From Piromyces finnis finn (Eukaryota; Fungi; Neocallimastigomycota): DNA of 64,000 nucleotides. Position numbers and translations under genes: made by a program. The stretch lies in the NCBI GenBank assembly GCA_002104945.1, contig MCFH01000058.1:248001-312000 (forward strand). The letters are read 5' to 3'. Under the pieces are notes generated by a model. That model did not search any database. It was not told the DNA's origin and saw only the letters and a program-made list of their open reading frames with translations. Shown one piece after another: positions 2,719 to 63,012 of this stretch (positions are counted from its first letter, which is position 1; the number at the start of each line of letters is the position of its first letter).

Positions 2719-2725
2719 AAAAAAA

Positions 2726-3523: not shown

Positions 3524-3537
3524 AAAATAACAAAAAT

Positions 3538-4444: not shown

Positions 4445-4600
4445 AGGATTATTACTATTATTTTTTTTTTAGACTAGGAAGAGAATACATTTATTCATGT
4501 ATTTATTTAATTTGAGATATTACATTATATTAGGTGACAATATGTATTGATATAATAAATAATAAATAAAAATAATAAAATATAAATATAAATATAAATA

Positions 4601-4924: not shown

Positions 4925-4959
4925 TAATTATTAAAGTTGCATAAAAGTTCAATAAACTC

Positions 4960-7167: not shown

Positions 7168-10632
<3,465 letters not shown>

Positions 10633-16412: not shown

Positions 16413-16484
16413 AGGGGCGTTCCGGATTTGAACCGAAGACCTATTGATCTGCAGTCAATTGCTCTACCGCTGAGCTAACACCCC
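16413..16484 (-). tRNA. trnC: tRNA-Cys(GCA), copy 2
   Basis: Exact reverse complement of copy 1. Confidence 0.97.
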
Positions 16485-17584
16485 ATTTTTGTTATTTTTT
16501 TTAATAAATAATGAAATTAATAAATATAAAATTATTATTATACCTGATTTTGTCACGAATACTAGTGAAATTACAATTTCAAGATCACTTGGAATTGTGA
16601 AATCACTTATGAAAATTCAAAATCAACAAATATTTTATTTTCAAATAAATTATAAAATTTTATTAAGAAATATTTAAAAATTTAGAAAAGGTTAAAATAT
16701 GACCTTAACCCTTAATAATTTTTATAATAAATAACTTTAACCCTTATCGTTAAAATGGAATAAGAAAAAACACGCGTATCTCCTCAACGAATGACGATTT
16801 TTGAATAAAAATATTTTGGTTATAATTAAGTTCGTTAGAAAGCCACGCTCGAGACAAACAACATATCTTAAAATCAGGTCAATATCTCTGCTGGTTCACG
16901 AGATATTCCAATTTAAAGATATTTTGTTAGCAATGATTAATTGTTTATTCAGAGAATGATCACCCCTGATATATCAAACATAAATCATTCACTCAAAGTA
17001 TAAAAAATTATTGTTTAATTAAATTAAAATTATTTTCCGGAACTAATTAACTTTATTTTATAATAATTATTTCAATAACATAATTTATAATCTTTGAACT
17101 AGAGGATTATAATTATTAATATTATATTCAATGAATTATATTATAATTAAGAAATAATTAATATTATGAATATTATAAACAATAGTTATTTTTTAATAAT
17201 TAGGAATAAGTCTTAAGTTTAGTTTAAGTATTATAAAATATATTATGAATATAATCATGTATTGAAAAGTTATTTTAGTATTAAATGTAAAATTACAAAT
17301 AGTATAAATAGTTTAGAATAGTTTTATGAATTAAATCTTTGTAAAGATTATTATCTTATTAATACTTAATAAGTATTACTATTAAATAATCTTATTATTA
17401 TATATATTCTTTAAATAAAATAAAAAGGAATTATTTTAACTATAATACATAATATAATTATTCATTTATAAATCAATTAAGATTATTTTAATAAAACATT
17501 TTTTTTTCTAACCTAGTTATCTTTTAACCTTTTATTTAATTTAATATTTTAATATTAAATTATAAGTTTAGTAAAACTTTTACA

Positions 17585-17595
17585 ATAATCTTTAC
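17585..17595 (+). promoter_or_regulatory. Self-priming PBS of element D (ATAATCTTTAC)
   Basis: No TGG tRNA-type PBS; exact complement GTAAAGATTAT at 17341-17351, 38 nt after TATAAATA (17303). Confidence 0.8.
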
Positions 17596-17662
17596 CGCGT
17601 TTTTTACCATAACTACCTTAGGAAAAAACTTAATTTAAAAATTTAAAAAAAAAAAAAAAAAA

Positions 17663-18574
17663 ATGACTCAACCAACACCTAAACCAGTTCAACAATTCCT
17701 AAAGCCTCAAGATTTAGAAGAATTTAAGAAAAATCTTTGTGGTGAATTAGACAAGTATATCACTCAACAATTGGATAAAAATACCACCTCCTTGTTAGAA
17801 CGTATGGATGCTATGTTAAAGGAACTTAAGAGTCGTGCTAATTATACTGAAACCGAGGAATCTTCTACTGATTATGATGAAGATCATGATGTTATAATGC
17901 GTAATAGAACCTATCCTATCAAACAAGTACCAGATCCAGGATTCTTTACTGGTGATACTACTCAGACTGAGTTATTCTGCGAACTCTGCCAAGCTACCTT
18001 TAAAACTCCACCTAACAATCAACTATCTGAAGAAGTAAAAATTAACTTTGTTGTTGTTAGATTACGTGATTCTGCCAGAACTTGGTATCATATTAAATAT
18101 AAAGATGGTATTACTCCTATGACTATGAACGAACTATTAAGTGAATTAAACAAAGCTTTTTCAAATGTTACCAGTACCAAATTAGCCATGATTCAATTAA
18201 TAGAATTAAGACAAGCTTATGGAAAAGTGAACGATTATATTAACAAATTTAGAGATTTAAGTCGTTGTTTAGAGATAGATGACATTAGTCTTTCACTAAT
18301 ATTTTTAAATGGTTTACATCCAAAATATAAGAATGAAATTAAGAAAGCTGATATTTTACCTAACACTTTAAGTGAAATGGTTACAAAGTGTATAATTTTT
18401 GAAAATTCTCTTGCTACTAATAATAAATTAAATATCAATAATAATAATAATAAAAATCAACATTACAATAAGAGAAACAATAGGAAATTCAATAAGAATA
18501 AAACCCATTATCAAAATTCAAACAATAATAATAATTATGTCAATAAAGTTCAAAAAATGAACTCAAAAAACTAA
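17663..18574 (+). CDS. gag: Gag of element D (303 aa, no CCHC knuckle)
   Basis: Retrotransposon gag-like core (RLRDSARTWY...LRQAYGKVNDYINKF...FLNGLHPKY); homologous to the gag at 29762. Confidence 0.88.
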   Translation: MTQPTPKPVQQFLKPQDLEEFKKNLCGELDKYITQQLDKNTTSLLERMDAMLKELKSRANYTETEESSTDYDEDHDVIMRNRTYPIKQVPDPGFFTGDTTQTELFCELCQATFKTPPNNQLSEEVKINFVVVRLRDSARTWYHIKYKDGITPMTMNELLSELNKAFSNVTSTKLAMIQLIELRQAYGKVNDYINKFRDLSRCLEIDDISLSLIFLNGLHPKYKNEIKKADILPNTLSEMVTKCIIFENSLATNNKLNINNNNNKNQHYNKRNNRKFNKNKTHYQNSNNNNNYVNKVQKMNSKN

Positions 18575-21500
18575 GAAATGAACTCTCAAGAGAGTCTAAG
18601 AGAGTTCATAATACAAAAATAATACATTACAACTTTCCTACATATGACTCTAAAATAAATAAAAAATTGCCTACAACATTTTTCAACTTAAAATTTTTTA
18701 TCCCAATTAAATTAAACAAACTTTATGATTTAAAAAATTCAATTAATAAAAATCAATACAATTTAATTTTAGATAGTGGCTCATATTGCAACTTTATTTC
18801 AATCAACTTGGTCAATAAATTAAAACTAAAACCACACAAATTATTACACTCAATTGAAATAAATGGAATTAGTGGTTCAATATTTATTGATACATACACC
18901 TTCTTATATTTTAAGACTACTATCTATATTAATCATTCAAAATTTTTAATTACTTTTAAAGAAAAATTTCTAATTATTAAAAATCTTCCAACAGATTTGT
19001 TATTAGGCAATAAATTTTTACACAAATATCAACTACATTTTAATTATAATAAAAATTTTGTATATTCAAGTTTAAATTTTAACAATTTTAAAAAATTAAA
19101 TTCTAATAAAATTATATATAAAATTAATAAAAATCGATTGAATAAATCCAAAAATTTAAAAATTAAAACCATTAATCATAATAAATTAACTTCCAATACA
19201 TCTTTTAATAATTTGAAAAATTGCTCTAAACCAAAATATCAAAATTTCAGCTATAATTACTTTATTCACTCATTTTTAGCTAATAGTGAAAAAGATTATA
19301 ATACTGATGATGAAGATGATAATGAAGAAGACTTCAAATTAGAAGAAGTACCAGAACCATATCGTGATTTAGCGGAAGTTTTCAGCAAGGTTAAGGCTGA
19401 TAAACTACCACCACATAGGCTAACGGATTGTAAAATCGTTTTACAAAAAGATGCTTCTTTACATTATGGTCCTATATATCCTCTATCTGAAGATGAATCC
19501 CAAGTTCTTAAAGAATACATAGATGAAAATCTCAAGAAAGGATTCATTAGACCATCTGAATCTCCAGCTGGTTATCCTGTTTTATTTCAGAAAAAGAAGG
19601 ATGGATCGTTACGTCTTTGTATTGATTACAAAAAATTAAATGCAGTTACAATTCGCAATTCTTACCCACTTCCTCTAATTACTGATATTATCGAAAGAGT
19701 GAAAGGTGCTAAATTCTTTTCAAAATTAGATCTTCGTTCTGCTTACAATTTAGTGCGTATTCGTGAAGGAGACGAATATAAGACAGCTTTTAGAACTAAA
19801 TATGGTCACTATGAATATTTAGTAATGCCTTTTGATTTAAGAAATGCCCCTGCTACATTTCAATCATTTATTAATTCAGTATTACGCCCTTATTTAGAAA
19901 AATTTGTTATTTTATATTTAGATGATATTCTGATTTACTCGGAAACATTAGATGAACATATACAACATGTTCGTACTGTTCTCCAAACATTGCTCAAAAA
20001 TAATTTATTTGCTAAATTAAAGAAATGTGAATTTCACAAGCCAGAAGTTGAATTTTTAGGACACGTTATATCAGGCAATGGTATATCTACTGATCCAAAG
20101 AAAATTAAATCTGTCCAAGAATGGCCTACACCTAATTGTGTAAAAGATGTTCAACGCTTTGTTGGATTATGCAACTATTATAGAAGATTTATAAAAGATT
20201 TTGCTACTATTGCTAAACCGCTTCACAATTTAACAAAGAAAAATACTAGTTTTAATTGGAATGATAAATGTAATAACTCATTTTTAGAATTAAAAAAGAG
20301 ACTAATCTCTTCACCTATTTTATTACATCCAGATCCAACCAAACCATTTATTGTCGAATGCGATGCTAGTAATTTTGCCATTGGTTGTATACTTTCTCAA
20401 AAGGATGAAGATAACAAATTACATCCTGTAGCATATTATTCAAGATGTTTAAACAATGCTGAATTAAATTATTCAATTACTGAAAAGGAACTTTTAGCTA
20501 TAAAATGTGCATTTTCTACCTGGAGACATTTATTACTAGGTGCTAAATACCAAGTAACCGTTTTTACTGACCATAAAAACCTTCTATACACCTTAGGTGG
20601 TAAAGTCGGAAACCAACGTCAACATCGTTGGCATTTATTTTTCCAAGAATATAATTTTCAATTAATATACCGCCAAGGAAGAAAAAATGGTAAACCTGAT
20701 AGTTTGTCAAGAAGACCTGATTACGAGAAAAATAATGTTGAACCTAAACCAGAACATATATTAGATTATAAAAACGTTCCCGATACTCCATGTTTTGTTG
20801 GTATTGTTGGTTCTCTCATTGATCAAATAATAGAAAATTATAAGGATGATGAAAATGCGAATAATATTTATCTTTACTTTAGTCCTAATAATGCTAATCA
20901 AGGTTACTTTTACAGACCTTTCAGAAAAATGGAAAAATTTAAAATAAAAAATAATTTAATTTTATATAATAATTTAATTTATGTACCAGAAAAACTTCAT
21001 GTAGATATTTTAACCAGGTACCATGATAACGCTACTGCTGGACATTTAGGTATTCGAAGAACTGAAGAACTAATTAACCGTAATTTTTGGTGGCCCAAAA
21101 TGCATCAAGATATCGTAAATTTTGTCAATTCTTGCGAACAATGTTCCAGAAATAAAGTTAATAGACATAAAAGATATGATCTTTTAAGACCTTTAGAAAT
21201 TCCTGATCGCCCTTGGAAATCTATTGAAATCGATTTTCTTTGTGGTCTCCCTGAATCAAAAAAGTTTTCCGTTATAATGGTTGTTGTAGATCGCTTTTCA
21301 AAAATGATTCACCTTATTCCGTTCAAAGAAATACCTACAGCTGAAGAAACTGCCAAAGCTTTCCTAAAAAAATATTTTTAAACTCCATGGACTACCTACA
21401 GATATTTATACGGACAGAGGAACACAATTTACTAGTGCTTTATGGATAGAAATTATGGAAAAATTGCGTGTTAAGCCAAAAATAGCTACCACAGATCACC

Positions 21501-22273
21501 ATGAGACCGTTGGTCAAGTAGAACGTTGTAACTCTTTCATTGAACAATATTTACGTTGCTATTCAAGAACATTTTTCCACGATGACTGGATTGAATGGTT
21601 ACATCTAGCTGAATTTGTTTATAATAATACAGTTCATGAATCTACAAAACAAACTCCATTTTTCATTAATTATGGATTCCACCCACCTATGGATGATGTC
21701 TTTTTGTTTCTAGGTTCTGATTCAAACTTTAAATACATTAAAGATGTTAGTAAAAATTTCCTTTTAGTTAAAGATGTTTTGCTTAGATCTCAAGATTTAT
21801 ACAAAAGAGCTGCCGATAAGAAAAGAATTATTGCTCCTGAATTGAATGAAGGACAAAAAGTTTGGATTCATGCACCTCCTGCTTTTGCTACTACTGAAAA
21901 TGCCAAACTAGCGCCTCGTAAGTATGGTCCTTACAAGGTTTTAGAAGTTTTAAACAATGGTAATTATAAAATAGATATTTCAAAATCACCTTTTCCAAAA
22001 CACCACCCTGTATTTCACATATCGGAACTTGAACCTTATGTATCTACGCCAGATAAATTTAAAAATAGATTTAAATATAAAGAAACTAATGCAGAAATTA
22101 TAGAAATTGGTGACTTTAGGACAAATTATAAAGAAAAACGCTACGAATATAAAATTCGTTATAATCACCGCCTAAGTTGGCACTGGGTTCCTGCTACAGT
22201 AATAGAAAGTAACCCAAGATATCAAGAATTATTAATTCAATTCAATAAAAGTATTAGAAAACACAAAATCTAA
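18565..22273 (+). pseudogene. pol: Pol of element D (PR, RT, RNase H, IN, degenerate chromodomain), with a +1 A frameshift at about 21370
   Basis: The -1 frame is open from the slippery site; motifs LDSGS, YLDD, VECDAS, HHCC, D-D-E, GPY. An A7 run where the paralogue implies A6; MPFDL instead of MPFGL. Confidence 0.9.
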
Positions 22274-24999
22274 TTCTTTAAATTGCATTTCAACAATTTT
22301 ATTTTTTTAAAAATTTATTAATATCTTTCACTAACATTATGTTTTATTATAATTTGTATTACTCATCTAATACATTTCAACACAAATTTCAAAAATTTTT
22401 TTCTATATGAATGTTAAATTTCAATTCAATAATTTTTGATCCAACAATTTTATCAATTTATTTAATTTAAAACACAAAGTTTTTATAATGAAAATTAAAT
22501 ATTTAAAGAGAATAATTTTCAATTTATTTTAGCAGTACAATTACAAATATTTATATGTTGTTAATGCTTATTTTATTCTCTATTCAATAGTATCAATTTC
22601 AATATTGTCACTATCTCGATCGATCATTAAAATCAATATTTTTCAGTGACATTTTTTCAAAAAGTTTAGTTCAAAATTTTTTTTGTATTTAATGAAAAAA
22701 TTTTTTATTATTAAAAATTTTTCAAAAATTTCAAAAAATTTTTTTTTCAAAATCATATTAATTAAAGTTTATTTGATCAATTTTTGAAATTTCAATTATT
22801 TTAGCAAATGTTAACATTTTTCAAAAATAAAAAGTGTTTCAATATCCTAGGAATAATATTTCTTATTCAAATTTTAATTTTTCGTACGAATTTCAATTTT
22901 TTCACTCAATGATCAATTTAAATTTCAACATTTCTTTCAAAAATTTTATGAATTTGACTGAATGTTACACAAGAAAATGTTTTTTAATTTTATTTCATAT
23001 ATTGCAATATATTCAACATATTATATTAAATATATTCTTTATTTAGTTACCATTTTATTTCATGTTACACATACAACTATATATTGGTTTATATTTAATA
23101 TATACTACTTCAATTTATTTCAATTATACTTTATTATACAACTTTATTTTATATTATTTCAATCGCCTGGTATTCGATTTTTTTTGGCGGAGCGATGTCA
23201 CGAATACTAGTGAAATTACAATTTCAAGATCACTTGGAATTGTGAAATCACTTATGAAAATTCAAAATCAACAAATATTTTATTTTCAAATAAATTATAA
23301 AATTTTATTAAGAAATATTTAAAAATTTAGAAAAGGTTAAAATATGACCTTAACCCTTAATAATTTTTATAATAAATAACTTTAACCCTTATCGTTAAAA
23401 TGGAATAAGAAAAAACACGCGTATCTCCTCAACGAATGACGATTTTTGAATAAAAATATTTTGGTTATAATTAAGTTCGTTAGAAAGCCACGCTCGAGAC
23501 AAACAACATATCTTAAAATCAGGTCAATATCTCTGCTGGTTCACGAGATATTCCAATTTAAAGATATTTTGTTAGCAATGATTAATTGTTTATTCAGAGA
23601 ATGATCACCCCTGATATATCAAACATAAATCATTCACTCAAAGTATAAAAAATTATTGTTTAATTAAATTAAAATTATTTTCCGGAACTAATTAACTTTA
23701 TTTTATAATAATTATTTCAATAACATAATTTATAATCTTTGAACTAGAGGATTATAATTATTAATATTATATTCAATGAATTATATTATAATTAAGAAAT
23801 AATTAATATTATGAATATTATAAACAATAGTTATTTTTTAATAATTAGGAATAAGTCTTAAGTTTAGTTTAAGTATTATAAAATATATTATGAATATAAT
23901 CATGTATTGAAAAGTTATTTTAGTATTAAATGTAAAATTACAAATAGTATAAATAGTTTAGAATAGTTTTATGAATTAAATCTTTGTAAAGATTATTATC
24001 TTATTAATACTTAATAAGTATTACTATTAAATAATCTTATTATTATATATATTCTTTAAATAAAATAAAAAGGAATTATTTTAACTATAATACATAATAT
24101 AATTATTCATTTATAAATCAATTAAGATTATTTTAATAAAACATTTTTTTTTCTAACCTAGTTATCTTTTAACCTTTTATTTAATTTAATATTTTAATAT
24201 TAAATTATAAGTTTAGTAAAACTTTTACAGATTTTTAAGTTAACCCTAAAAGTAACTTAAAACAAGTTATAGTTTAATTAAGTACTTTACCAAAATTCTT
24301 AAATAAAATTAATCCTAAACACTGCATATATTTTGATTATTGAAAGAAAATAATAAACTTTAATTAATCGAGATCAAAATATATAACTCTTGTTAAATTA
24401 ATTGTTAAATTAAATATTTAATAACTTCGTTAGTAAATTACACTTTAAAAGTAAACAAATATAATAATTCATATTATAAAATAATATAATTAAACACCTT
24501 TATTAAAACATTAAAAATAATTATTACTTTAATTAATTGTAAAATAAACAACTTTTTATATTCTTTAACTTTTAATTATTTCTTTTATTGTTATTTCTAA
24601 TTACTTTTATTATTTTTATTGTAAATAGTTATTAATTTTATTGTTTTAATGTAAATAGTTTAAATTTAAAAGAAAATATAAATACATGTAAATATTCTTA
24701 TTTTAATCATTATTATTATTATTAATAAAGAAATATTATATAGTTAGATTAATATTTTATAATTTTAATAATCACTTTTATACTTAAATAAATAAAATTT
24801 TAAATATTTAAATATTAGAAAAACAAGTGTTTCTAATAAAACAATTTAGTGTTTTAACAAAACAATTTTATTAATTTTTATAAAAACGATTTTAAATCTT
24901 AATCAATATAACTTATATAGTTATAACAAAAGATATAATATAATAATCACTTTTTGAAGTAAAATTCAAAATTAAGATTATTATCAAATTATATCATTT

Positions 25000-26764
<1,765 letters not shown>

Positions 26765-26857
26765 AGTATTATAATAAAACATAATTTATATTAAATTAAT
26801 AAATAGGGTTAGGGCATTCTGACCTAACTTACCTAAATTCATCTTAGATCCTTAACA

Positions 26858-27593
26858 AAATAGAAATAGAAAATATTATTTTAAAACTTGTTACTAATTA
26901 GTGTAATGACTCTATTAGAAAATTAAATATTTTATGCATTTTTATCACAGGATTCATTTTATGTAATTTTTAATTAATTTAAAGAATAATTTAGAAAGAA
27001 AATTTAATTTTTTATTTAACCACATCAGATTTAGAAAAAGTATAAATAGAAGTGGTGTGGATCAAAAATTAAATAGTTGTGCTTTTATTAACTTTAAATT
27101 TAATCTTTACTTTGTTTAAAAATAAATTTAATAATAATAAAAAATTATTTTAAATAAATAGATTTATTGACTTATAGGGAATACAAAATTTATTTTTCTA
27201 TATAAATATTATTAATTCCTACATTAATAAATTCTTTATATAGAATCGCGTTACAATTAGCTAAGAAAATTAGAATATTTTAATAATAAAATAATAAATT
27301 AATATATATTTTTTTATAATACATAGCGAGATGTATTATACATTTATTTTAAATAAATAAACTAATATTATAAAACAAGGTGTTTTTTTAAAATTTTTAA
27401 ATTATATTCATTAATTATATAAATAATAGTAAATAATTAAAATAATGTAAAATATAAATATTTAATTAAATTTTAAAAATGTTAATTATATCAAACTTGT
27501 AGAATGAGCAAGTAAAAATAAATCATTCAATTACACACAAATATACCACTTTCTAAGCCTATTTAGAATTAAGGTATATTTGAACTTGTGTCA
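26858..27593 (+). mobile_element. Partial LTR, family J, interrupted by a solo LTR
   Basis: Matches the 3' part of 48888-49382 and ends ...GAACTTGTGTCA; preceded by a family B-like LTR end (CATTCTGACCT...CTTAACA, ending at 26857). Confidence 0.7.
26902..27255. mobile_element. Solo LTR, family K (354 bp)
   Basis: TGTAA...TTACA termini; TSD ATTAG at 26897-26901 and 27256-27260; removing it restores the family J sequence. Confidence 0.8.
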
Positions 27594-27879
27594 ATATTAA
27601 TACGTAATAAACAGAAAATACTACCTTTAGCATAAACTCCAGGTCAATTTACATAAGGGTTAAGATTATGATTGATCAATAATAATTTTAACTAATGTCA
27701 AATTTAATTAATATAAACTATGTAATAATAATAATAATAATAATAATTAAATAAATAAATATATAAATAAATCACATAATTATTAATAACTGGAATATAT
27801 TATTTCAGCATAATTCCTTATTATCACAGTATTAAAATAAATAATAATATTATGATATATTATATAATAACATATCATT

Positions 27880-28595
27880 GTAAGAGGTTTATTATATTTT
27901 CTATAAGAGGGATAGATTTATATATTATTTTATATAAAAGATATTACAATAATAAATAAATAACAACCTATCATACGAGCTAATATTATAAATAATGTTT
28001 TTATATTAAATTTTATAAAGAAATTAGTAATTAAATAATGAATAAAACAATTTAGTTATATATAATAATAAAGGTTTATTCGCCTTATTTCTCTTATTAA
28101 TATAAAGTATCTTTAACTATTTTAAATATAAGTATTCTTTATTATTAATTATTTATTATATTATTTTACTTTAATCTTTAATACTAACACTAAAGTATTA
28201 GTATTTGTTTACATGTTTCCTTTTATAATATTATTAATCTATATTAACTATTATTGGTTAGTTTAAATATAAAATAAATATTATTTAAATATAATTTAAA
28301 TATAAAATAATATTTATTTTATATTAACATATATTGTAGTTCGAGCGTGGATTTCTAACGAACATAGTTTTGTTGAGTTAGATTGTTTTTCGTTATAAAG
28401 TTATGAACTTAAAGGTTAAAGGTGCTTATAATAATTTATAGAAAGGTTAAGGTCTTGTTACTTGAATTTTTAATATTCTTCAATATTGTTTTATATTTTT
28501 CAAAATTTGGAAATAATTAATTTTTTGATATTTTAAAAGTAATTTCACAATTCCAAGTGATCTTGAAATTGTAGATTCCACTAGTATCCGTGGCA
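27880..28595 (-). mobile_element. Diverged LTR related to family D
   Basis: Its reverse complement starts TGCCACGGATACTAGTGG...TTTCAAGATCACTTGGAATTGTGAAAT and contains GTTCGTTAGAAATCCACGCTCGA; the left boundary is uncertain. Confidence 0.6.
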
Positions 28596-28947
28596 TGATA
28601 ATATTCGTATCTAAAATTTAATAAATAAAAATAAAGAAAATATAATAACTGATTTTTATACTTGTTCATTTGCAAGACTTTGTTAGTTTTATAATATAAA
28701 ATTTACTTTATTTAATTATAAAATTATAATATTATTTAATAACTCTAGTATTACTAATTAATTAAAATATATTATTTATAATCTTATTTCAGGGATTATT
28801 AATAACTTTTTTAATAATAAGTTTTATTATAATATAAAATTATATTTGAATTTAAAAATATATCCAATTTTTCGCTCTATACAATTATAAGCAATTTTTT
28901 TTTCATTTATATTATATAACATTTTAGATATTTAAAATAAGAAATAT

Positions 28948-29019
28948 AGGGGCGTTCCGGATTTGAACCGAAGACCTATTGATCTGCAGTCAATTGCTCT
29001 ACCGCTGAGCTAACACCCC
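28948..29019 (-). tRNA. trnC: tRNA-Cys(GCA), copy 3
   Basis: Exact reverse complement of copy 1. Confidence 0.97.
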
Positions 29020-29727
29020 TTTCATCTGACTTTGTCACAATAACATATATAAAAATTTAAAAAATTTGGACACATGGAAAAAATTGTCAAAATCACAATT
29101 CATGAAATTTGACATTTCATGAAATTTCATAATTTTGAATTAATAGTTAAATTAATTAAAATATTAATTTAATAATATTTTACTAATAATAGTTTATTTA
29201 ATATAAATATTAATTGGAAAGCTATTTATTATCCGGAGATAAATAGAGTGTAACAATTAATTAATATTAAACAAACCAATTAGTAAAATAAGATTCATTT
29301 AAATAATTATTAATATTATTTTTAACAACTTATTAATATCGATATTTAAAGAAAATTATATTATTATTACTATTATATCTTATTAATATTTATATTTATA
29401 TTATTATACATGTATAACTTAAATTATATTATTATTATACTTTATTAATATCAACATTATATTAAAAATGAAGTATAAATAAGTTGAACAAAGAACAACT
29501 TTAAGAAGTTCTTTGTGAGATTATTATACTCATTTTTATATAGTAAATTCAATATTTAAAATTAATAATTATCATTTACTTATATTATAAAAATTAAATA
29601 AAATATTTCTTAAAAAACTATATTTATTACTCTTTTATTTATAAAAATTTATTATTTACTATATAATTAAGCCTATCCTAACCTAGTAGACTTAATTATA
29701 ATTCTAAATCCACTCTAACTCTTGACA

Positions 29728-29737
29728 ATAATCTCAC
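29728..29737 (+). promoter_or_regulatory. Self-priming PBS of element C (ATAATCTCAC)
   Basis: Exact complement GTGAGATTAT at 29515-29524, 41 nt after TATAAAT (29474); no TGG-type PBS. Confidence 0.8.
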
Positions 29738-29761
29738 CATAACTTTGGTTACTACCTTAGG

Positions 29762-30862
29762 ATGGCAGAACAAAACTTTGCTAGCTCTTGGCAAACTATG
29801 GATGAAGTTAATCAACTCCGCGAAGATGCTAAAACTACTGCTGTAGACATTATGAACAGCGTTCAAGAAAACTTTGCTACTATTAGTCAAGTTAAAGACT
29901 TTGAAAAACATATTGAATCTCAGTTTCAAGAAATTAAAAGAAATACTGCTAATTTCGCACAAGTTTTGGAATCGGTCTCTAACAATATCAACACCATTCA
30001 AGAGTATTTAAATAAGAATGGAAAACCAAGTGGTGGTCAGCCAGACCTAACCCCTTCAGTTGCCCCATCTACATCTACAAAATATGATTTGGATTTTGAT
30101 GTAATAATGAGATCAAAATATTCCACTCCAATAAATCAAGTTCCAGACCCAGGTCTTTTTTCTGGTGATCCTCATGAAACTGAACTATTCTGTCAAATTT
30201 GTGAAGATACTTTTAGCACCTATCCTAATAAACATATGATGGAAGAAGCCAAAATTAATTTTGTTAAAACAAGATTAAGAGGAATTGCTAGAACTTGGTA
30301 TTTAACAAGATACAGTGGAAATACCCATCCCTCTACTATGTTCGAATTATTAGGAGAATTAAAAAACGCTTTTCCAAATGTTTCAAGCCGTAAATTAGCT
30401 AAGATCAAGCTAAGTAAATTGAAACAAACATATGGAAAAATTAATGAATATATGGAAGAATTTAGATCATATATTCAATATTTTAACTGGGATCAAGAGG
30501 TTGTTACTCTTATGTTTTATACTGGTCTTCATCCTAAGTATCAAGAAGATATTGAAAGATTAGATGACTTTCCTACTACTCTCGAAGCTATTTTCACAAG
30601 ATGTATTTTATTTGAACAAAACAATGTTTCAAATAAAAAGTTAAACCAAATTAATAATAAAAGCCATGGAAGAAAAAATTCATTTTATAATAACAATAAC
30701 AATAATTATAATAATAATAGAAACAATTATCAAAAATATCACAATAATAATAATAACAATAATAATTTAAAATCTAATTATTCAACTAATAATAATGGTG
30801 GTAATAATAATAATAATTATTCCACTACAAAAACCCAAAAAATTTCTTCAAAAAATTTTTAA
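29762..30862 (+). CDS. gag: Gag of element C (366 aa)
   Basis: Homologous to the element D gag (VPDPGLFSGD, RLRGIARTWY, FYTGLHPKY). Confidence 0.88.
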   Translation: MAEQNFASSWQTMDEVNQLREDAKTTAVDIMNSVQENFATISQVKDFEKHIESQFQEIKRNTANFAQVLESVSNNINTIQEYLNKNGKPSGGQPDLTPSVAPSTSTKYDLDFDVIMRSKYSTPINQVPDPGLFSGDPHETELFCQICEDTFSTYPNKHMMEEAKINFVKTRLRGIARTWYLTRYSGNTHPSTMFELLGELKNAFPNVSSRKLAKIKLSKLKQTYGKINEYMEEFRSYIQYFNWDQEVVTLMFYTGLHPKYQEDIERLDDFPTTLEAIFTRCILFEQNNVSNKKLNQINNKSHGRKNSFYNNNNNNYNNNRNNYQKYHNNNNNNNNLKSNYSTNNNGGNNNNNYSTTKTQKISSKNF

Positions 30863-33800
30863 ACAATGAACACCATAAGACGTCAATGGATGTTCATAAT
30901 ACACCAAAAATTATTTATTATAATTTCCCATCTCTAGAGAACAAAGAAAATCCCAATTTAAATTCATTTCTAACCTTTAATTCATATATTCCTAAAGAAT
31001 TTCTAAATAACAACTCTAATTTTATTACCAATTCTCCAATAACCTGTAATTCAATACTTGATTCAGGTTCCTCATGTAACTTTATTTCTACCATATTTGT
31101 AGAAAAATATAATTTAATTAAAAGAAAATTAAAAAACAAATTGATTATAAAAGGTATTAGTGGGTTTACTACTGATATCAATAATTATGTTTATTTAAAA
31201 TTTCAATTAAAAATTTTTATCAAAAATAAATTTTATTTTATATCTTTTAAAGAAAAATTCTTAGTTTCAGAACATATTCCTATGGATTTATTATTTGGAA
31301 ATAAATTCATGAAGAAATTTAAGATTCATTTTAATTATAAAAATAATCATTTATATTGTAATAATTTTAAACACTTCAATAATAAGAATTTAAAAATTTT
31401 TTCAAAAAATTTAAAAATTTCTCATTCTAAAAAAGATTTTAATAATTCATTTTCCGATAATACTAATAATAATTCTACTAATTTCTCTCATAAATCTAAT
31501 CGTCAAGTTAAAGATAATAATTCTACGTCTTTTAATAAGAGTGATATCAATTATTTTATCCATTCATTTTTATCTGAAAATGTCGAAAATTTTGAAGATG
31601 ATGAAGAAAATGACCTAACCCTTATCATGGATGATATCCCTAATGAATATAAAGATCTTGCTGTTGTTTTCAGCAAATCAAAAGCTGATAAGTTACCTCC
31701 ACACCGTTTAACTGATTGTAAAATAGTCCTAGAAAATGACGCCACTTTACATTATGGACCTATCTATCCTTTATCAAGACAAGAGGAAGAAGCCTTACAA
31801 GAATATATTAATGAAAATCTTAAAAAAGGTTTTATTAGGCCCTCTGAATCTCCTGCAGGTTACCCTGTTGTTTTCCAGAAGAAAAAAGATGGCTCATTAA
31901 GGGTCTGTATTGATTACAAAAAGTTGAACGCTGTAACAGTAAGAAATTCGTACCCTTTACCTTTAATTTCAGATATCATTGAAAGGGTTAGGGGTTCAAA
32001 AATTTTCACTAAATTGGACTTGAGATCAGCTTATAATTTGATAAGAATAAAAGAAGGTGATGAATATAAGACTGCTTTTAGAACAAAGTTTGGTCATTAC
32101 GAATATTTAGTAATGCCATATGGATTAAAAAATGCTCCAGCAATATTTCAATCATTCATAAATTCAATATTACGCGAATATTTGGATAAATTTGTTATTT
32201 TATACATGGATGATATTTTAATTTTCTCAGAAAATCTCAACGATCATATCAACCATGTAAGATCTGTTTTAGATAAATTAATACAAAACAACTTATATGC
32301 AAAATTTGAAAAATGTGAATTTCATAAAAATGAAGTTGAATTCTTAGGTTTCACTATTTCAGGTAATGGTATCTCTACTGATCCAAAGAAGATCGAAGCT
32401 ATTAAAGAATGGCCTAGACCAAAATGTGTTAAAGATGTTCAACGCTTTCTTGGTCTTTGTAATTATTATAGAAGGTTTGTTAATAATTTTGCCAAAATCG
32501 CCAAACCTTTACATAATTTAACTAGGAAAAATGTTAAGTTTCATTGGAATAAGATATGTGATGATGCTTTCGTAAATTTACAAAATAAATTAATTACCTC
32601 TCCCGTTTTAGTTTTTCCTGACACTAATAGGCCGTTTATAGTAGAATGTGATGCCAGCAATTTCGCAATAGGTTCCGTTTTATCTCAATATGATGATGAT
32701 AAAAAACTACATCCTGTTGCTTATTTTTCCAGAAGTTTAAATGATACAGAAAGGAACTATTCTATTACAGATAAAGAACTTCTTTCTATTAAATCTGCTT
32801 TTTCGGCTTGGCGACATCTACTTTTAGGTGCTAAATTTAAAGTAAAGGTTTATACAGACCACCGCAATTTACTTTATACTTTAGGTGGAAAAATTCAAAA
32901 TCAACGTCAACATCGTTGGCATCTCTTCTTTCAAGAATATGATTTTGAATTAATTTATCGCTAAGGAAGAAAAAATGGTAAGCCAGATAGTCTCTCTAGA
33001 AGACCTGATTATAATTCTGGTAATGAACAAATAAAACCTGAGCATATTTTAGATATAAAAAATGTTAAAAACATTCCATGTTTTGTGGGAATTCTTAGTG
33101 ACTTTATTGATAAAGTTATCGAATATACTAAAACAGATAATACTGCAAACGATATTAGATTATATTTTGCACCAAATAATGCTAATCAAGGTTATTTTTA
33201 TAGACCTTTTAGAAAAATGAATAAATTCAAGATTCAAAATAATATGATTCTTTATAATAATTTAATATATATTCCTGAAGCTTTAAGATTAGAAGTACTT
33301 ATGCGATACCATGAAAATCCTGCTGCTGGTCATTTGGGTATTAAAAGAACTGAAGAATTAATTACTAGAAACTATTGGTGGCCAAAAATTCATAAAGATG
33401 TAACTGAATTTGTTAATTCTTGTGAAACTTGTACTAGAAACAAATTCAATAAACACAAAAAATATGGTCCTTTACAACCTTTAGAAACTCCTGATAGACC
33501 ATGGCGTTCTGTTGAAATTGACTTTTTATGTGGTTTACCTGATTCTAAAGGATATACTGTTCTAATGGTTACTGTAGATAGATTTTCAAAAATGATTCAT
33601 TTAGTTCCTTTTAAGAAAATACCTGATGCTAAACAAACAGCTACAGCTTTTATTAAAAATATATTCAAACTTCATGGATTACCTTCTGATATTTATACTG
33701 ATCGCGGTTCTCAATTTACTAGTGATCTTTGGAATAGTTTAATGGAAGAACTTAAAGTTAAAACTAAAATTGCTACCACTGATCATCATGAAACGGTCGG

Positions 33801-34566
33801 GCAAGTTGAAAGATGTAACTCTTTTATTGAACAATATCTACGCTGTTATTCAAAGTCCTATTATCATGATGATTGGGTTGAATGGATTCACTTAGCCGAA
33901 TTTGTTTATAACAATTCTATTAATGAGTCTACCAAACAAAGTCCTTTCTTTATTAACTATGGATTCCACCCTCCTGTTGATGATGTTTTCCTTTATGACA
34001 AATCCTATACTAATAATAATTTTATTAGAAATGTTTGTGATAATTTTAATTATGTTAAAGAAGTTTTATTTAGAGCCAAGGATTTATATAAAAAACATGC
34101 CGATAAGAAAAGGATGTCACCTCCTATATTTAAAGTTGGCGATAAAGTTTGGATTCAAGCTCCTCCATCCTTTTCTACGGAAGAAACTCCAAAACTTTCT
34201 CCTTGTAAATATGGACCCTATAAAGTTTTATATGTTTTGGAAAATAACAATTATAAAATAGATATACACAACTCTCCTTTCCCAAAACATCATCCAATCT
34301 TCCATATTTCGGAACTTGAACCTTTTATTCCTACCCCTTCAAGATTTTTATCAAGATCAAAGGATCCCGAATCAATTAAAGACATCATTGAGATTGCGGG
34401 TTTTCGAACTAATTATAAACTTAAACGGTATGAATACAAAATTAGATACAAATACCGTTCTCAATATAATTGGGTTCCTTCTAGTGAAGTTGAAGATAAC
34501 CCAAGAAACCAAAATATCTTCTTATTATATTTAAAGAACAATAGGAAGCCTATTGATATCGCTTAT

Positions 34567-34572
<6 letters not shown>
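30853..34572 (+). pseudogene. pol: Pol of element C, with an in-frame TAA at 32962-32964
   Basis: Motifs LDSGS, YMDD, VECDAS, HHCC, DDE, GPY and a chromodomain-like tail; LIYR*GRKNG versus LIYRQGRKNG in element D. Confidence 0.9.
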
Positions 34573-34600
<28 letters not shown>

Positions 34601-36347
34601 AGAGAAAGAGAGAGAGAATGAAAAAAAAAAATGAGAAAACTATTATAATACAAAATTACTTCAATTTAACCCATCACAGATTTAAAAATTGAAATTTCAA
34701 AAATTTTTATATTCACTATTTTTTAATTATAAAATTTATTTTTCAGCTTATTATTATTAATATTTTTAATATCAAATTTTAAAAATTTCAAAAAACATAA
34801 AAAACCCTTTAAAATCAAAATTTAAAATTTCAAAAAATTCAAAATTTCAATTATGACAGTTGTACAACATAAAAAATTTCAAAAACACATTTTTTATACA
34901 ATACATATATGTATTTCATAACAAAATTTCATTTTTACCAATTTTTGACAACTTTTGAAATTTCGCGAAATGGCCATTTAAAATTCATTCCTCCATCCTC
35001 ATGTGACCATTTCGAAATTTCAAAAATTTTGAAAATATTAAAATTTCAATATTTTAAATTCAATATAATATATTCCACTATCAAAAAATTGTCTAGTATC
35101 CAATTTTAGTGGAAGGGCGTTGTCAAAATCACAATTCATGAAATTTGACATTTCATGAAATTTCATAATTTTGAATTAATAGTTAAATTAATTAAAATAT
35201 TAATTTAATAATATTTTACTAATAATAGTTTATTTAATATAAATATTAATTGGAAAGCTATTTATTATCCGGAGATAAATAGAGTGTAACAATTAATTAA
35301 TATTAAACAAACCAATTAGTAAAATAAGATTCATTTAAATAATTATTAATATTATTTTTAACAACTTATTAATATCGATATTTAAAGAAAATTATATTAT
35401 TATTACTATTATATCTTATTAATATTTATATTTATATTATTATACATGTATAACTTAAATTATATTATTATTATACTTTATTAATATCAACATTATATTA
35501 AAAATGAAGTATAAATAAATTGAACAAAGAACAACTTTAAGAAGTTCTTTGTGAGATTATTATACTCATTTTTATATAGTAAATTCAATATTTAAAATTA
35601 ATAATTATCATTTACTTATATTATAAAAATTAAATAAAATATTTCTTAAAAAACTATATTTATTACTCTTTTATTTATAAAAATTTATTATTTACTATAT
35701 AATTAAGCCTATCCTAACCTAGTAGACTTAATTATAATTCTAAATCCACTCTAACTCTTGACAAAAATTAAAAATTTTTTTTAAAATTTGAAAATTTGAA
35801 AATTTGAAAAAATTTATTTTTTAAATTTTTATTAAAAAATTTCAAAGTATAAAATTTCTAATATTTGAAATTATTAAATTTTTTAAAATTATTAAAATTT
35901 TATTATTAAAAATTTTATTTTAAATTTATTTATTAACTATTTACAATAATTATATTAATTATTAATTTATAAAAATTAAATATTTTATAATTAGATAATA
36001 ATTAATTAAAATTAAAAAATGTAATAATTAAAATTGTTCATGTATAAAAAGAACAAAAATTGACAAAAATTACAAAGCTTTAGCGTTAGTAATTTTTTAA
36101 CCTAAAGTTAATAAAATTTATAAACTCCTATAAAACCTAAAACTTTAAAAATTTTAATATTTTTAATAACTTAATATATGCTGATATTAAGTTATTGCTA
36201 AAATAAAAATATTATTTAAATTTCTTTATATAAATATTATTAGCTTTACGCCTTCAATAGGAAAGCGTATTATATTTATTAATTAATATAACTAGTGTGC
36301 TTACCACACTTTTCTTTAATAAAAAATCGCTTTTTGACAGACTTTGT

Positions 36348-37468: not shown

Positions 37469-38533
37469 AACTTTTTTGATACAAGATGCATAGAAAAATA
37501 TAATATTTTAAATATTTCATGAATAATATCTAATCCTTTTATAAATTGTATATCAATTACTAGTGTTAATAATAATTAAACTATATTAGTATAAATTATT
37601 ATGACGCAAATTTTACACATATATTAGAATAGTTAATTACACAAGAAACGAAAAGATATAAAAATAGTGATAAAGAACAATACATAAAAGAAGAGAAAAA
37701 ACTTTTCATATATAAATAATATTTGATATTTTAGTTTTAAGTATAAGTTCTATTTTATTTTATTTTAGTTACAGTTTATTTTAGTTTAGTTTTAGGTCAC
37801 TAATTACGTATTTAGTATTTATTTATCATATTTAATTCAGTTTAAAATATTAATTATAAAAGAAAAGAATAATTATTGTTTATTTTTATTATTTCAAAAA
37901 GTTATATTTTATTATTAATAAGAATTTTATCAACATATTTTTATATTTACATTTTATATTTAAGTATTTATATTCATTAAACAATAACTTTCGATTCTAC
38001 TAGTATTGAATGTTATTAATGTTATAATTATAATCATAATAATAATAATAATTAAATAAAGAAACTTTAAACCAAAATCTATTTAATTATATTATTATAA
38101 AATTTATTATTTTTATTATTTGTTTTTATTATTTATTTTTATTATTATAAAATAGAAATAAATACAATATTATCTAATATATTATTCAACTCTCATTCCC
38201 TATTGCTAACGTTCACAATTATATTTTATTTATGGTGTTTTTGAAATATATTGCATCATAAAATTTGGTGGAGAATCCGGGCGTAGCAATATTGAATAAT
38301 ATGAAACAATAATAGTATTATTTCTATTCTAGTTATATTTTTTTATTTTTATTTTATTATTTTTAATTAAAATAAACTCTTTTATATAAATAAAACTTTC
38401 TACTATAAAACTATTAAATATACACAAATATTATTATATATATAATATAAAAAAAAAAAAAACATTATAATATTAATAAGTATAAGAAGTTATTATAAAA
38501 ATTTATTTTAAAATAAATAAATAAATAATTCAA

Positions 38534-47475: not shown

Positions 47476-47478
47476 TTT

Positions 47479-60402: not shown

Positions 60403-61045
60403 TGTCAAAATCACAATTCATGAAATTTGACATTTCATGAAATTTCATAATTTTGAATTATTAGTTAAATTAATTAAAATATTAATTTAATAATATTTTA
60501 CTAATAATAGTTTATTTAATATAAATATTAATTGGAAAGCTATTTATTATCCGGAGATAAATAGAGTGTAACAATTAATTAATATTAAACAAACCAATTA
60601 GTAAAATAAGATTCATTTAAATAATTATTAATATTATTTTTAACAACTTATTAATATCGATATTTAAAGAAAATTATATTATTATTACTATTATATTTTA
60701 TTAATATTTATATTTATATTATTATACATGTATAACTTAAATTATATTATTATTATACTTTATTAATATCAACATTATATTAAAAATGAAGTATAAATAA
60801 GTTGAACAAAGAACAACTTTAAGAAGTTCTTTGTGAGATTATTATACTCATTTTTATATAGTAAATTCAATATTTAAAATTAATAATTATCATTTACTTA
60901 TATTATAAAAATTAAATAAAATATTTCTTAAAAAATTATATTTATTACTCTTTTATTTATAAAAATTTATTATTTACTATATAATTAAGCCTATCCTAAC
61001 CTAGTAGACTTAATTATAATTCTAAATCCACTCTAACTCTTGACA
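60403..61045 (+). mobile_element. Solo LTR, family C (643 bp)
   Basis: Near-identical to 29085-29727; TSD AAAAT at 60398-60402 and 61046-61050. Confidence 0.95.
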
Positions 61046-61051: not shown

Positions 61052-62056
61052 TGTTAAGTTTTTGGATTTGGTTATGCGGCCAGGTCAGAATGTTATCAAT
61101 TATATAGTAAATATATTTTTAAGAAATTAAATTTAAATATAAAATAACCCTTTAAACTTCCAAATGAAAAATTAATATTTATTCTTTAGAATAATTTTTT
61201 TTTTTTTTTTATAAAATTTTATTTATTTATTAATAATAATATAAATGATAATATATTTAATAACTATATAATTAAGATTATAACTATAATCTTTACAAAG
61301 AATTAAAATCAAATTCAATTCATTCTATTTTATATTCTTTGTTCAGATTATTAAATTGATAAAAATAAAGTATTACATGTAATATGTTAATAATATAATA
61401 AGATTGTTTGTTTGCTTGTTTGTTTGTTTTGTCATGACATAAAATAAAATAAACATATGATTAATCATTTAAACACTTGATCCATTAACCTATTTTATAA
61501 TAATTAAAATTATTTAATTTATAAATGTTAACTGTTACACCTAAATGGTTTAGTTCTATTTTTAGTAACAGTCACTATCATTAATTAAATTAATATAATT
61601 AGAATTTCTATTGATATCTTTTTAATTTTCGTCAAGTCATAAGAAATGTCTATGATCCATATTTGATATCACATTAATTTTAATTTACTTATTAAAATCT
61701 TCAAATGATCATATCTTCCTTAAATGACCAGTTAGAAGGACCGCGATTGTACCAAAATGTAGCTTTTTCCTTAAGCTTTCTAATAAACCTGGTTTCACAG
61801 CCGTAGTACTTATAGCCGTAGCGATCGTTTTTGGCGAGTTACACCATGTTTCGTGTTTGTTTATTTTTGGTTAAGGGTTATAGTGTATTGATATTAAATT
61901 TTTTGAAATCATAACCCTTTCACTGAATCAGAATTTAAAAGGTGACTTTTAAAGGTGTTTTAAAATAATTATTGGGATCATTTAATTCTAATTATTATGT
62001 TTAATTAATTATAGATATTATCTGAATTTGTTTTAAATCCAGTTAATATCTTCACA
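61052..62056 (-). mobile_element. Solo LTR, family B (1005 bp)
   Basis: TG...CA termini; TSD AAATC at 61047-61051 and 62057-62061; GTAAAGATTAT primer motif on the minus strand (61286-61296), 38 nt after a TATA-like motif. Confidence 0.85.
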
Positions 62057-62122
62057 AAATCAGGTTTAATAATAATTTTATATTTATTAATTTCATTATT
62101 TTTCAATAGAATCAATAAAATA

Positions 62123-62194
62123 GGGGTGTTAGCTCAGCGGTAGAGCAATTGACTGCAGATCAATAGGTCTTCGGTTCAAATCCGGAACACCCCT
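62123..62194 (+). tRNA. trnC: tRNA-Cys(GCA), copy 4 (G68A variant)
   Basis: Same as copy 1 except ACACCCC, which converts a U.G pair to U-A. Confidence 0.97.
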
Positions 62195-63012
62195 AATATT
62201 TTATTTCTTATTTTAAAATCTAAAATGTTATGTCAATTAAATGGAAAATAATTAACATGTATAAAATTATAAAATTAAATAGTTATATTTGTTTATAAGT
62301 AAACTCTAAAATAATTTTGTATAAATAGTAAGAGTTTGTTCTTTTAAAAATTGTTCCTAATAATCGGTCAAAATTTGATATATTATATTAAATTTAAAAT
62401 AAAATACGCTTTATAATTAATAAACAAATCTCTTAAATTTAAAAATAAACTCTTTTAATTATGTTTTTAAATTATCTCTTTATTATATTTTTATTATTTA
62501 TTTATTGTCTACTTATTGTCTTTTTTTTTATAAATTAATTATGTTTTTAAATTATCTCTTTATTATATTTTTATTATTTATTTATTGTCTACTTATTGTC
62601 TTTTTTTTATAAAGAAGAATTTTATTTTCCTTTTATACATTTTCATTTATTACATGTATTATTTTTAACTATTAAATATTATTACTATTACTATTGTTAT
62701 TATTTATTAAAATTAAAAGGATAAATTAAAATTATGTCTTAGTATTATAAAATATTATAGAATATTACTTATTTGATTTTCTTATTACTTCAAAATGTTT
62801 AAATTTAGAAAAATTATTATAAATTATCATTGACTATCATTAAATGTATAATACCTTAAATAAAATAATTAAAATTTAAAATTAAAATAAAATTAAAATA
62901 AAATTATAACAAAATTAAAATATTAAAAGTATCAATTATTATAAGCACGCATTTTATTCAGAAACATAAAAGAGTTCTGTATTTTTTATTGATAAATTAT
63001 TTATCAATATCA

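What the first reader, a model, noticed from the sequence alone, without database searches (positions are those of the whole stretch)
17303..29737. Tf1-type self-priming in two chromovirus-like elements, with compensatory covariation
Seen: neither D nor C has a TGG PBS. The bases directly after each 5' LTR (D: ATAATCTTTAC, 11 nt; C: ATAATCTCAC, 10 nt) are exact complements of a motif inside the same LTR (17341-17351; 29515-29524), 38-41 nt after a TATA box. The two elements differ at paired positions on both strands. Solo LTR B has the same 11-mer at the same 38-nt spacing. Established: S. pombe Tf1 primes reverse transcription with the first 11 nt of its own mRNA, and this is predicted for other Tf1/sushi-group elements. 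Inference: self-priming extends to this early-diverging fungal lineage, in elements that are positioned by tRNA genes yet use no tRNA primer.
Basis: partly seen in the sequence, partly recalled or inferred. Interest (0 to 1): 0.8.

Follow-up and report, generated by a model that had tools for sequence, protein, structure and literature searches.

The report
Self-priming retrotransposons beside fungal tRNA genes
Two young retrotransposons in an AT-rich, probably anaerobic gut fungus genome seem to start copying themselves with the first 10-11 bases of their own RNA rather than a host tRNA. This trick is already known from fission yeast Tf1, so they are new members of a known kind.

Summary
Elements D (16551-24229) and C (29085-35763) are complete Ty3/gypsy elements with TG..CA LTRs and 5-bp target duplications. 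The 11 (D) or 10 (C) bases right after each 5' LTR are exact complements of a motif inside that LTR, 38-41 nt after a conserved TATA box. Neither has a TGG primer site.

Chance is 0.06-1.2% per element. Relatives fetched from gut metagenomes raise the count to five primer/PBS variants, each perfectly self-complementary: three compensated substitutions and one compensated indel.

I also found a second long-range helix, between U5 and the leader after the PBS. It has compensatory changes in 14 of 18 pairs and crosses the primer:PBS duplex, as in the Tf1 'pretzel'. A third duplex was not found.

Four insertions start 64-67 nt upstream of a tRNA gene. Pfam finds no chromodomain, but the integrase tail folds as one.

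Tf1-type self-priming is well supported from sequence. The transcription start is unmapped.

Novelty is modest. Self-priming is considered general for the Tf1/sushi group, and Tj1 of S. japonicus already combines it with tRNA-gene targeting. Both copies have one break in pol.

The parts
16413..16484 (-). tRNA-Cys gene; its 5' end lies 66 nt from the start of element D
   Evidence: ARAGORN, Rfam
16551..24229 (+). Element D, a complete LTR retrotransposon flanked by a 5-bp target duplication (16546-16550 / 24230-24234)
   Evidence: self-BLAST, sequence
16551..17584 (+). D 5' LTR, TG..CA, 1034 nt, identical to the 3' LTR
17303..17310 (+). D TATA box, conserved across the family, 38 nt before the primer motif
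17341..17351 (+). D putative self-primer (11 nt) and inferred first bases of the RNA
17500..17519 (+). D U5 strand of the second long-range helix (H2)
17585..17595 (+). D primer-binding site, exact complement of 17341-17351, abutting the LTR end
17610..17629 (+). D leader strand of helix H2
17663..18574 (+). D gag, intact
18667..22273 (+). D pol (protease, RT, RNase H, integrase, chromodomain-like tail), broken by one frameshift with no internal stops
22097..22261 (+). D integrase C-terminal tail with a predicted chromodomain fold
23186..23195 (+). D polypurine tract abutting the 3' LTR
23196..24229 (+). D 3' LTR, with the primer motif again at 23986-23996
28947..29020 (-). tRNA-Cys gene; its 5' end lies 64 nt from the start of element C
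29085..35763 (+). Element C, a complete LTR retrotransposon flanked by a 5-bp target duplication (29080-29084 / 35764-35768)
29085..29727 (+). C 5' LTR, 643 nt, one mismatch to the 3' LTR
29474..29481 (+). C TATA box, 41 nt before the primer motif
29515..29524 (+). C putative self-primer (10 nt)
29670..29689 (+). C U5 strand of helix H2
29728..29737 (+). C primer-binding site, exact complement of 29515-29524
29749..29768 (+). C leader strand of helix H2; it covers the gag start codon
29762..30862 (+). C gag, intact
30886..34572 (+). C pol, broken by one in-frame stop with no frameshift
35110..35119 (+). C polypurine tract
35121..35763 (+). C 3' LTR, with the primer motif at 35551-35560
60403..61045 (+). 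Solo LTR of the C family, with the primer motif at 60833-60842 and its own 5-bp duplication
61052..62054 (-). Solo LTR B, D-like, with the D 11-mer at 61296-61286; it starts 67 nt upstream of a tRNA-Cys gene
62122..62195 (+). tRNA-Cys gene next to solo LTR B

Best explanation
D and C belong to a Ty3/gypsy family, probably of anaerobic gut fungi (Neocallimastigomycota), that starts reverse transcription by Tf1-type self-priming.

Proposed mechanism:
1. Transcription starts about 38-41 nt after the LTR's TATA box, at the conserved G of the primer motif (inferred).
2. The first 10-11 bases of the RNA fold back over 176-385 nt. They pair with the primer-binding site that abuts the 5' LTR, giving an 11-13 bp duplex (complementarity shown, pairing predicted).
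3. The element's RNase H would cut after the paired segment, and the freed 3' end would prime minus-strand DNA (inferred by analogy with Tf1).
4. A second helix between U5 and the leader crosses this duplex and holds the primer-binding site in a closed loop (shown by covariation). In several members it also covers the gag start codon.

Because the plus-strand copy of a primer-binding site is templated by the primer, a change in the self-primer can pass to the primer-binding site. That would explain the clean covariation (inference from the general retroviral scheme).
For: - Exact complements sit at the fixed position after TSD-verified LTR ends in D and C. Per-element chance is 0.06-1.2%.
- Five primer/PBS variants occur in 10 elements from the window and from metagenome or read-archive contigs, each perfectly complementary to its own LTR.
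- D and C, in one genome, carry different PBS sequences, so one host RNA cannot match both.
- In 9 of 10 elements the complementarity stops at the same conserved G. A TATA box sits 38-41 nt upstream, and these are the only two conserved blocks in that part of the LTR.
- The minimum-energy fold closes the 5' end on the PBS in D, C and three of six relatives. Duplex energies are -10 to -16 kcal/mol.
- Helix H2: 87.8% of cells are paired against 68.2% when shuffled (0 of 500 shuffles reach it). 14 of 18 pairs have changes on both sides, and register slides fall to 28-47%. Own-partner pairing beat all 20000 permutations.
- There is no TGG after the LTR, and no complementarity to the neighbouring tRNA-Cys or tRNA-Val.
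- Another element in the same window has a canonical TGG site.
- More distant relatives fetched with the same query also show 11-nt self-complements 2 nt after their LTRs and no TGG.
- Literature: Tf1 mechanism and pretzel structure (bioRxiv 10.1101/2022.12.06.519325); Tj1 (PMC4600332).
Against: - No RNA data: the transcription start, the poly(A) site and hence the R region are inferred.
- The primer:PBS duplex is short and AU-rich. In three of eight elements the pseudoknot-free minimum-energy fold prefers H2 or a local hairpin.
- The third duplex of the Tf1 pretzel was not found.
- The host's full tRNA set could not be examined; only Cys and Val genes were at hand.
- Placement of the RT/IN in the Tf1/sushi clade was not tested, because no named reference sequence could be obtained with the tools.
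- Both window copies have one break in pol, so neither encodes a complete pol as it stands. This says nothing against the family mechanism.
Confidence: 0.85

Rival explanations
1. The LTR motif and the post-LTR bases do pair, but only as a structural element of the 5' UTR, for example for packaging, dimerisation or control of gag translation. Reverse transcription would be primed by something else.
For: The region carries at least one other strongly covarying long-range helix (H2), and that helix covers the gag start codon in several members. Conserved structure here therefore need not all concern priming.
Against: The paired segment always begins at the first base after the LTR's terminal CA. 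That is the one place where a primer's 3' end must sit to make correct LTR ends. No alternative primer site (TGG or other) is present near it. Tf1 and its relatives have the same layout.
Confidence: 0.08
2. The post-LTR bases bind a host RNA: an internal tRNA segment, a half-tRNA or another small RNA. The match to the LTR would be incidental.
For: Half-tRNA priming exists in some Ty1/copia lineages (PMC6317226). The host tRNA repertoire was not available here.
Against: There are five PBS variants, two of them in the same genome window, and each matches its own LTR perfectly. The sites have 2-3 G+C in 10-11 nt, which is unlike tRNA sequence. The best complementarity to the tRNA-Cys and tRNA-Val genes at hand is 4-6 nt.
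Confidence: 0.04
3. The complementarity is a chance inverted repeat in very AT-rich DNA.
For: 12-14-nt chance inverted repeats are common in these LTRs when any position is allowed.
Against: The fixed-position chance is at most 1.2% per element. The same position is complementary in all 10 elements tested, through four compensated changes, and the LTR motif is one of only two conserved blocks.
Confidence: 0.01

Closest known systems
Tf1 / Tf2 of Schizosaccharomyces pombe (founders of the Tf1/sushi group)
   Same: The primer-binding site abuts the 5' LTR and is complementary to about 11 nt inside the same LTR, placed downstream of a TATA box. There is no tRNA site. [quoted passage not shown] The target duplication is 5 bp. 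The integrase ends in a chromodomain-type tail.
   Different: The host is a different fungal phylum. The LTRs are much longer and the loop between primer and PBS is 176-385 nt. Only two of the three pretzel duplexes were found. Gag and pol are in different frames at a constant offset, whereas Tf1 has a single ORF. The chromodomain is too divergent for Pfam. Insertions lie next to tRNA genes rather than Pol II promoters.
Tj1 of Schizosaccharomyces japonicus
   Same: It combines predicted self-priming with integration upstream of tRNA genes in a fixed orientation (PMC4600332), and it has a chromodomain. It is the direct precedent for 'tRNA-positioned but not tRNA-primed'.
   Different: Tj1 inserts 5-11 bp upstream of the mature tRNA 5' end. 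The four insertions seen here start 64-67 nt upstream. Tj1 has an in-frame stop between gag and pol; here the frames differ.
Ty3 of Saccharomyces cerevisiae
   Same: It is the best solved-structure relative of pol (7q5b, E 1e-110; 4ol8). It shares the domain order and tRNA-gene targeting.
   Different: Ty3 uses a tRNA primer and inserts at the Pol III start site. It has no chromodomain.
Vertebrate sushi-type elements and plant Tcn1-clade chromoviruses
   Same: Self-priming is predicted for them from the same kind of LTR/PBS complementarity (PMC6317226). The only solved-structure sequence relative of both gag proteins is PEG10 (7lga), which to my knowledge is a domesticated sushi-type gag. A frog and two Closterium proteins are among the few named relatives of pol.
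   Different: They have different hosts, and no tRNA-gene association is reported in the passages I read.

Membership tests
Tf1/sushi-type self-priming retrotransposons | The primer-binding site starts 0-2 nt after the 5' LTR and is complementary (10 nt or more) to a sequence inside the same LTR | tested here: met
   D 11 nt, C 10 nt, and 10-12 nt in eight relatives, all exact and starting at the first base after CA
Tf1/sushi-type self-priming retrotransposons | No PBS complementary to a tRNA 3' end (no TGG 0-5 nt after the LTR) | tested here: met
   Sequence; no match to the neighbouring tRNAs
Tf1/sushi-type self-priming retrotransposons | The complementary LTR sequence is the very 5' end of the element's mRNA | not testable with these tools
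   Indirect evidence only: a conserved TATA box 38-41 nt upstream, and complementarity that ends sharply at one conserved G
Tf1/sushi-type self-priming retrotransposons | Three-duplex 'pretzel' RNA structure around the PBS | tested here: inconclusive
   The central duplex and one flanking duplex (H2, with strong covariation) are present and cross each other. The duplex between the U5 end and the region after the primer was not better than shuffles
Tf1/sushi-type self-priming retrotransposons | RNase H cleavage of the RNA duplex releases the primer | not testable with these tools
   An RNase H domain is present; its activity cannot be read from sequence
Tf1/sushi-type self-priming retrotransposons | RT/IN branch within the Tf1/sushi clade | not tested
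   No Tf1, sushi or Maggy sequence could be obtained from the tools. Hints only: the PEG10 hit of gag, the Pfam SH3_Tf2-1 domain, and self-complement signatures in distant relatives
Chromoviruses | Chromodomain at the C-terminus of integrase | tested here: met
   Pfam finds none even at E up to 10, and close relatives lack PF00385. However, the tail is 50% identical between D and C and conserved in 18 of the 19 other aligned sequences. It is modelled as three strands plus a helix with pLDDT about 90. All top PDB fold matches listed are chromodomains or chromo-shadow domains, with target TM 0.43-0.84 and rmsd mostly 1.4-2.8 A. This is met by predicted fold only, and the Foldseek E-values are weak (0.02-0.3)
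Ty3/gypsy (Metaviridae) LTR retrotransposons | gag, then protease-RT-RNase H-integrase in that order, TG..CA LTRs, 5-bp target duplication, polypurine tract | tested here: met
tRNA-gene-targeting LTR retrotransposons (Ty3 / Tj1 kind) | Insertions at a narrow, fixed distance upstream of Pol III genes | tested here: met
   D 66 nt, C 64 nt and B 67 nt from tRNA-Cys genes, and a relative in L086 64 nt from a tRNA-Val gene. All have the 5' LTR next to the tRNA. The sample is only four insertions, and the distance differs from Ty3 and Tj1

The most novel reading that the evidence does not exclude
Anaerobic gut fungi may host a self-priming chromovirus lineage with three distinctive traits. Its divergent chromodomain tail would have been re-purposed to place insertions at a fixed point about 64 nt upstream of tRNA genes, in a fixed orientation. 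That position differs from Ty3, Tj1, DGLT-A and TRE5-A. Its second leader helix, which crosses the primer duplex and covers the gag start codon, would act as a switch between translation and priming of the genomic RNA.
Probability: 0.2. Interest if true: 0.6.

Novelty: new member of a known kind. Interest (0 to 1): 0.4.

Why it matters
This extends a sequence-level signature of self-primed reverse transcription to what is probably the Neocallimastigomycota, an early-diverging fungal phylum. That supports the view that self-priming is old and general in the Tf1/sushi branch of chromoviruses.

The family gives unusually clean natural covariation data for both the primer duplex and a crossing helix. 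Such data could guide structure work on how the primer is presented.

The fixed insertion point about 64 nt upstream of tRNA genes, together with a chromodomain that sequence profiles miss, adds a further case to the convergent evolution of tRNA-gene targeting.

For genome annotation, LTR-element finders that require a tRNA primer site will mis-score these elements.

Tried and rejected
- Free scan for inverted repeats upstream of gag: too many chance 12-14-mers in AT-rich DNA, so it was replaced by the fixed-position test.
- First MAFFT alignment of the U5-leader region (A2): it put D's U5 motif out of register. It was redone with sequences starting at the motif (A4).
- Third pretzel duplex: energies were no better than shuffles.
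- tRNA scan of 60 fetched loci and Rfam scan of nine loci: only one relevant tRNA (Val, L086), so the host tRNA set stays unexamined.
- Target site of the L002/L003 element: the 5' LTR is truncated or the contig is chimeric, so it was unusable.
- Relatives whose precomputed Pfam hits include a chromodomain (L095) or not (L096): the LTR ends could not be fixed, so the priming type stays undecided.
- Transcript ends from read-archive contigs: contig ends fall in poly(A) runs or inside genes, so they give no evidence on the transcription start.
- Lin & Levin 1997 (PMC1369541) is not held.
- The genome-contig collection holds only bacteria and archaea, so it was not scanned.
- The large representative search, the remaining word searches and the listing of cluster members were not used.
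The coordinate was corrected.
- In one search the pol frame of C was translated inside a script only to count stops.
Full report
**Anatomy.** The window is about 20% G+C. Self-comparison and direct reading define two complete LTR retrotransposons.
- Element D spans 16551-24229. Its LTRs are 1034 nt, 100% identical and TG..CA. A 5-bp target duplication lies at 16546-16550 and 24230-24234, and a polypurine tract at 23186-23195.
- Element C spans 29085-35763. Its LTRs are 643 nt with one mismatch. Its 5-bp duplication lies at 29080-29084 and 35764-35768, and its polypurine tract at 35110-35119.
- Pfam finds gag, aspartic protease, RT, RNase H, the integrase zinc finger and an SH3_Tf2-1 domain in both, and the integrase core domain in C. 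In D the frameshift lies between the zinc finger and the SH3 domain, and no core-domain hit was returned.
- The best solved relative of pol is the Ty3 Gag-Pol polyprotein.
- Both gag genes are intact. D pol has one frameshift and no internal stop. C pol has one in-frame stop and no frameshift. Given D's identical LTRs, its single break could be an assembly error, or the copy may have moved using proteins from another copy. I cannot tell which.
- In D, C and four relatives pol sits at the same frame offset from gag, so that offset is the family's normal layout and not a break.

**The observation.**
- Bases 17585-17595 are the exact reverse complement of 17341-17351. Bases 29728-29737 are the exact reverse complement of 29515-29524. 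In both elements pairing can extend one base into the LTR's terminal A.
- No TGG follows either LTR.
- The LTR motif lies 38 nt (D) and 41 nt (C) after the first T of a TATA box.
- The D-like solo LTR B, on the minus strand from about 62054 to 61052, has the D 11-mer at 61296-61286 with the same 38-nt spacing.
- A solo LTR of the C family (60403-61045) has the C motif at 60833-60842.
- For a fixed position, an exact complement somewhere in the LTR arises in 18 of 5000 (D) and 3 of 5000 (C) dinucleotide shuffles, and for 0.1-1.2% of real k-mers.

**Relatives.** A word-based protein search with the longer D pol piece found relatives at 62-84% identity. They come from gut-type metagenomes, read-archive assemblies and NCBI assemblies. 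Five hits are named as Orpinomyces sp. gene models. This, together with the base composition, points to Neocallimastigomycota, but the host species itself was not identified.

I fetched contigs by exact protein look-up and by one metagenome scan. In every relative where both sites are on the contig, the bases right after the LTR's CA are an exact complement of a motif in that element's own LTR.

| Primer motif | Elements |
|---|---|
| GTAAAGATTAT | D, B |
| GTGAGATTAT | C |
| GAAAAGATTAT | L001, L085 |
| GTAAGGTTAT | L002-L004, L006 |
| GTAAGATTAT | L007, L083, L086, L093 |

- Relative to the commonest form, that is three substitutions and one 1-nt indel, each mirrored in the PBS.
- The distance from motif to PBS varies from 176 to 385 nt.
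- An alignment of the LTR around the motif (A3) shows only two conserved blocks: the TATA box and the motif with its short pyrimidine-rich lead-in.
- In 9 of 10 elements complementarity stops at the same G. L093 extends two bases further.

**Folding.** When folded from the inferred start, the minimum-energy and centroid structures of D and C close the 5' end onto the PBS, with z about -3 against shuffles. The same holds for three of six relatives. Duplex energies are -10.4 to -15.9 kcal/mol.

**A second helix.** The three relatives that did not close the 5' end on the PBS led to a second feature. In two of them (L002, L093) the fold instead pairs the leader with U5. A roughly 20-nt stretch of U5, 35-87 nt before the LTR end, pairs with the leader 26-34 nt after the PBS start. 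The pairing forms two arms (6-8 and 6-11 bp) around a 2x2 pyrimidine internal loop.
- On a MAFFT alignment of 11 elements (A4), 87.8% of cells are standard pairs against 68.2% when shuffled; 0 of 500 shuffles reach that.
- 14 of 18 pairs show changes on both sides, and sliding the register drops pairing to 28-47%.
- Pairing each leader with its own U5 beats all 20000 permutations among elements.
- Energies are -9 to -20 kcal/mol.
- This helix crosses the primer:PBS duplex, which is why a pseudoknot-free fold shows one or the other. That topology matches the description of the Tf1 'pretzel', in which PBS-adjacent sequences pair with LTR sequences downstream of the self-primer (bioRxiv 10.1101/2022.12.06.519325).
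- In C, L002, L006, L083, L086 and L093 the outer arm covers the gag start codon.
- A third duplex, between the U5 end and the region after the primer, was not supported.

**tRNA genes.**
- D starts 66 nt, C 64 nt and B 67 nt upstream of the 5' end of a tRNA-Cys gene. A relative in L086 starts 64 nt upstream of a tRNA-Val gene.
- In all four the 5' LTR faces the tRNA gene and the element points away from it.
- D and B sit at the same pentanucleotide inside two copies of an older LTR (family A). The end of that LTR lies 13 nt from the one tRNA-Cys gene where this could be read directly (3538), and the same flank recurs at the D and B loci.
- The 26 nt after the D and C LTRs share at most 4-6 complementary bases with these tRNAs.

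**Chromodomain.**
- Pfam finds none in the integrase tails, even at E up to 10.
- The 75-80 residue tail is nevertheless 50% identical between D and C and conserved in 18 of the 19 other aligned sequences.
- With that alignment, AlphaFold2 models three strands and a C-terminal helix at pLDDT about 90.
- All top PDB fold matches listed are chromodomains or chromo-shadow domains (MPP8, CDYL2, HP1, Chp1, CBX). Target TM-scores are 0.43-0.84, although the Foldseek E-values are weak.
- 'Chromovirus-like' therefore holds by predicted fold. I did not assess the aromatic cage.

**What is known.**
- Self-priming was shown for Tf1 and is regarded as a common feature of the Tf1/sushi group. It is also predicted for the plant Tcn1 clade and a copia lineage (PMC6317226).
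- Tj1 of S. japonicus is predicted to self-prime and integrates 5-11 bp upstream of tRNA genes (PMC4600332).
- Searches of the held literature found no description of such elements in anaerobic fungi. That library is incomplete.
- More distant relatives recovered by the metagenome scan also show 11-nt self-complements 2 nt after their LTRs and lack TGG. This fits a group-wide trait.

**Verdict.** Tf1-type self-priming is the best explanation (confidence 0.85). The transcription start, RNase H cleavage and clade placement remain untested. The finding is a new member of a known kind. Its own points of interest are the approximately 64-nt tRNA-upstream insertion point, the cryptic chromodomain, and the covarying crossing helix over the gag start.

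Noticed in passing
window 1907-2722, 2725-3524, 24230-25003 (-), 47476-48291 (-), 51583-52393, 59334-60402: A third LTR family ('A', about 815 nt, TG..CA, copies 95-99% alike) occurs as solo or tandem LTRs. Its end lies 13 nt upstream of the tRNA-Cys gene at 3538, a Ty3/Tj1-like position. D and solo LTR B are nested inside A copies at the same pentanucleotide. No internal part of this family is in the window.
   Followed up: partly
window 37477-46767: Another complete LTR element has 783-nt LTRs (99% alike) and three long ORFs. It has a canonical TGG-type primer site starting at 38266, 7 nt after its 5' LTR, so tRNA-primed and self-primed elements coexist in this genome. Its proteins were not classified.
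   Followed up: partly
window 60398-61051: The C-family solo LTR is inserted one base from the end of solo LTR B. It has the same 5-bp duplication sequence as the full-length C at another locus, which may reflect a target-site preference or chance in AT-rich DNA.
   Followed up: no
window 1326-1852 (-): A further partial B-like LTR, 92% identical to 61525-62056, lies next to the tandem A LTRs and the tRNA-Cys gene at 3538. All four tRNA-Cys genes in the window are thus flanked by LTR material.
   Followed up: no
window 4542-4934, 9075-9580, 24951-25345, 40743-41294: Long arrays of short tandem units (spacings of 9, 12 and 15 nt) are shared between distant places. Some lie inside or next to repeats. 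Their nature (coding repeats or satellites) was not examined.
   Followed up: no
window 578-1121 and 39775-40318: A 544-nt inverted duplicate at 99.8% identity, unexplained.
   Followed up: no
L086 6349-17536: A relative is present as a tandem array (LTR-internal-LTR-internal, 100% identical over 5.5 kb) next to a tRNA-Val gene. This is either a real tandem or an assembly effect.
   Followed up: no
window 29749-29768 and the equivalent leaders of L002, L006, L083, L086, L093: The outer arm of the covarying U5-leader helix includes the gag start codon, which suggests coupling between translation and RNA structure.
   Followed up: partly
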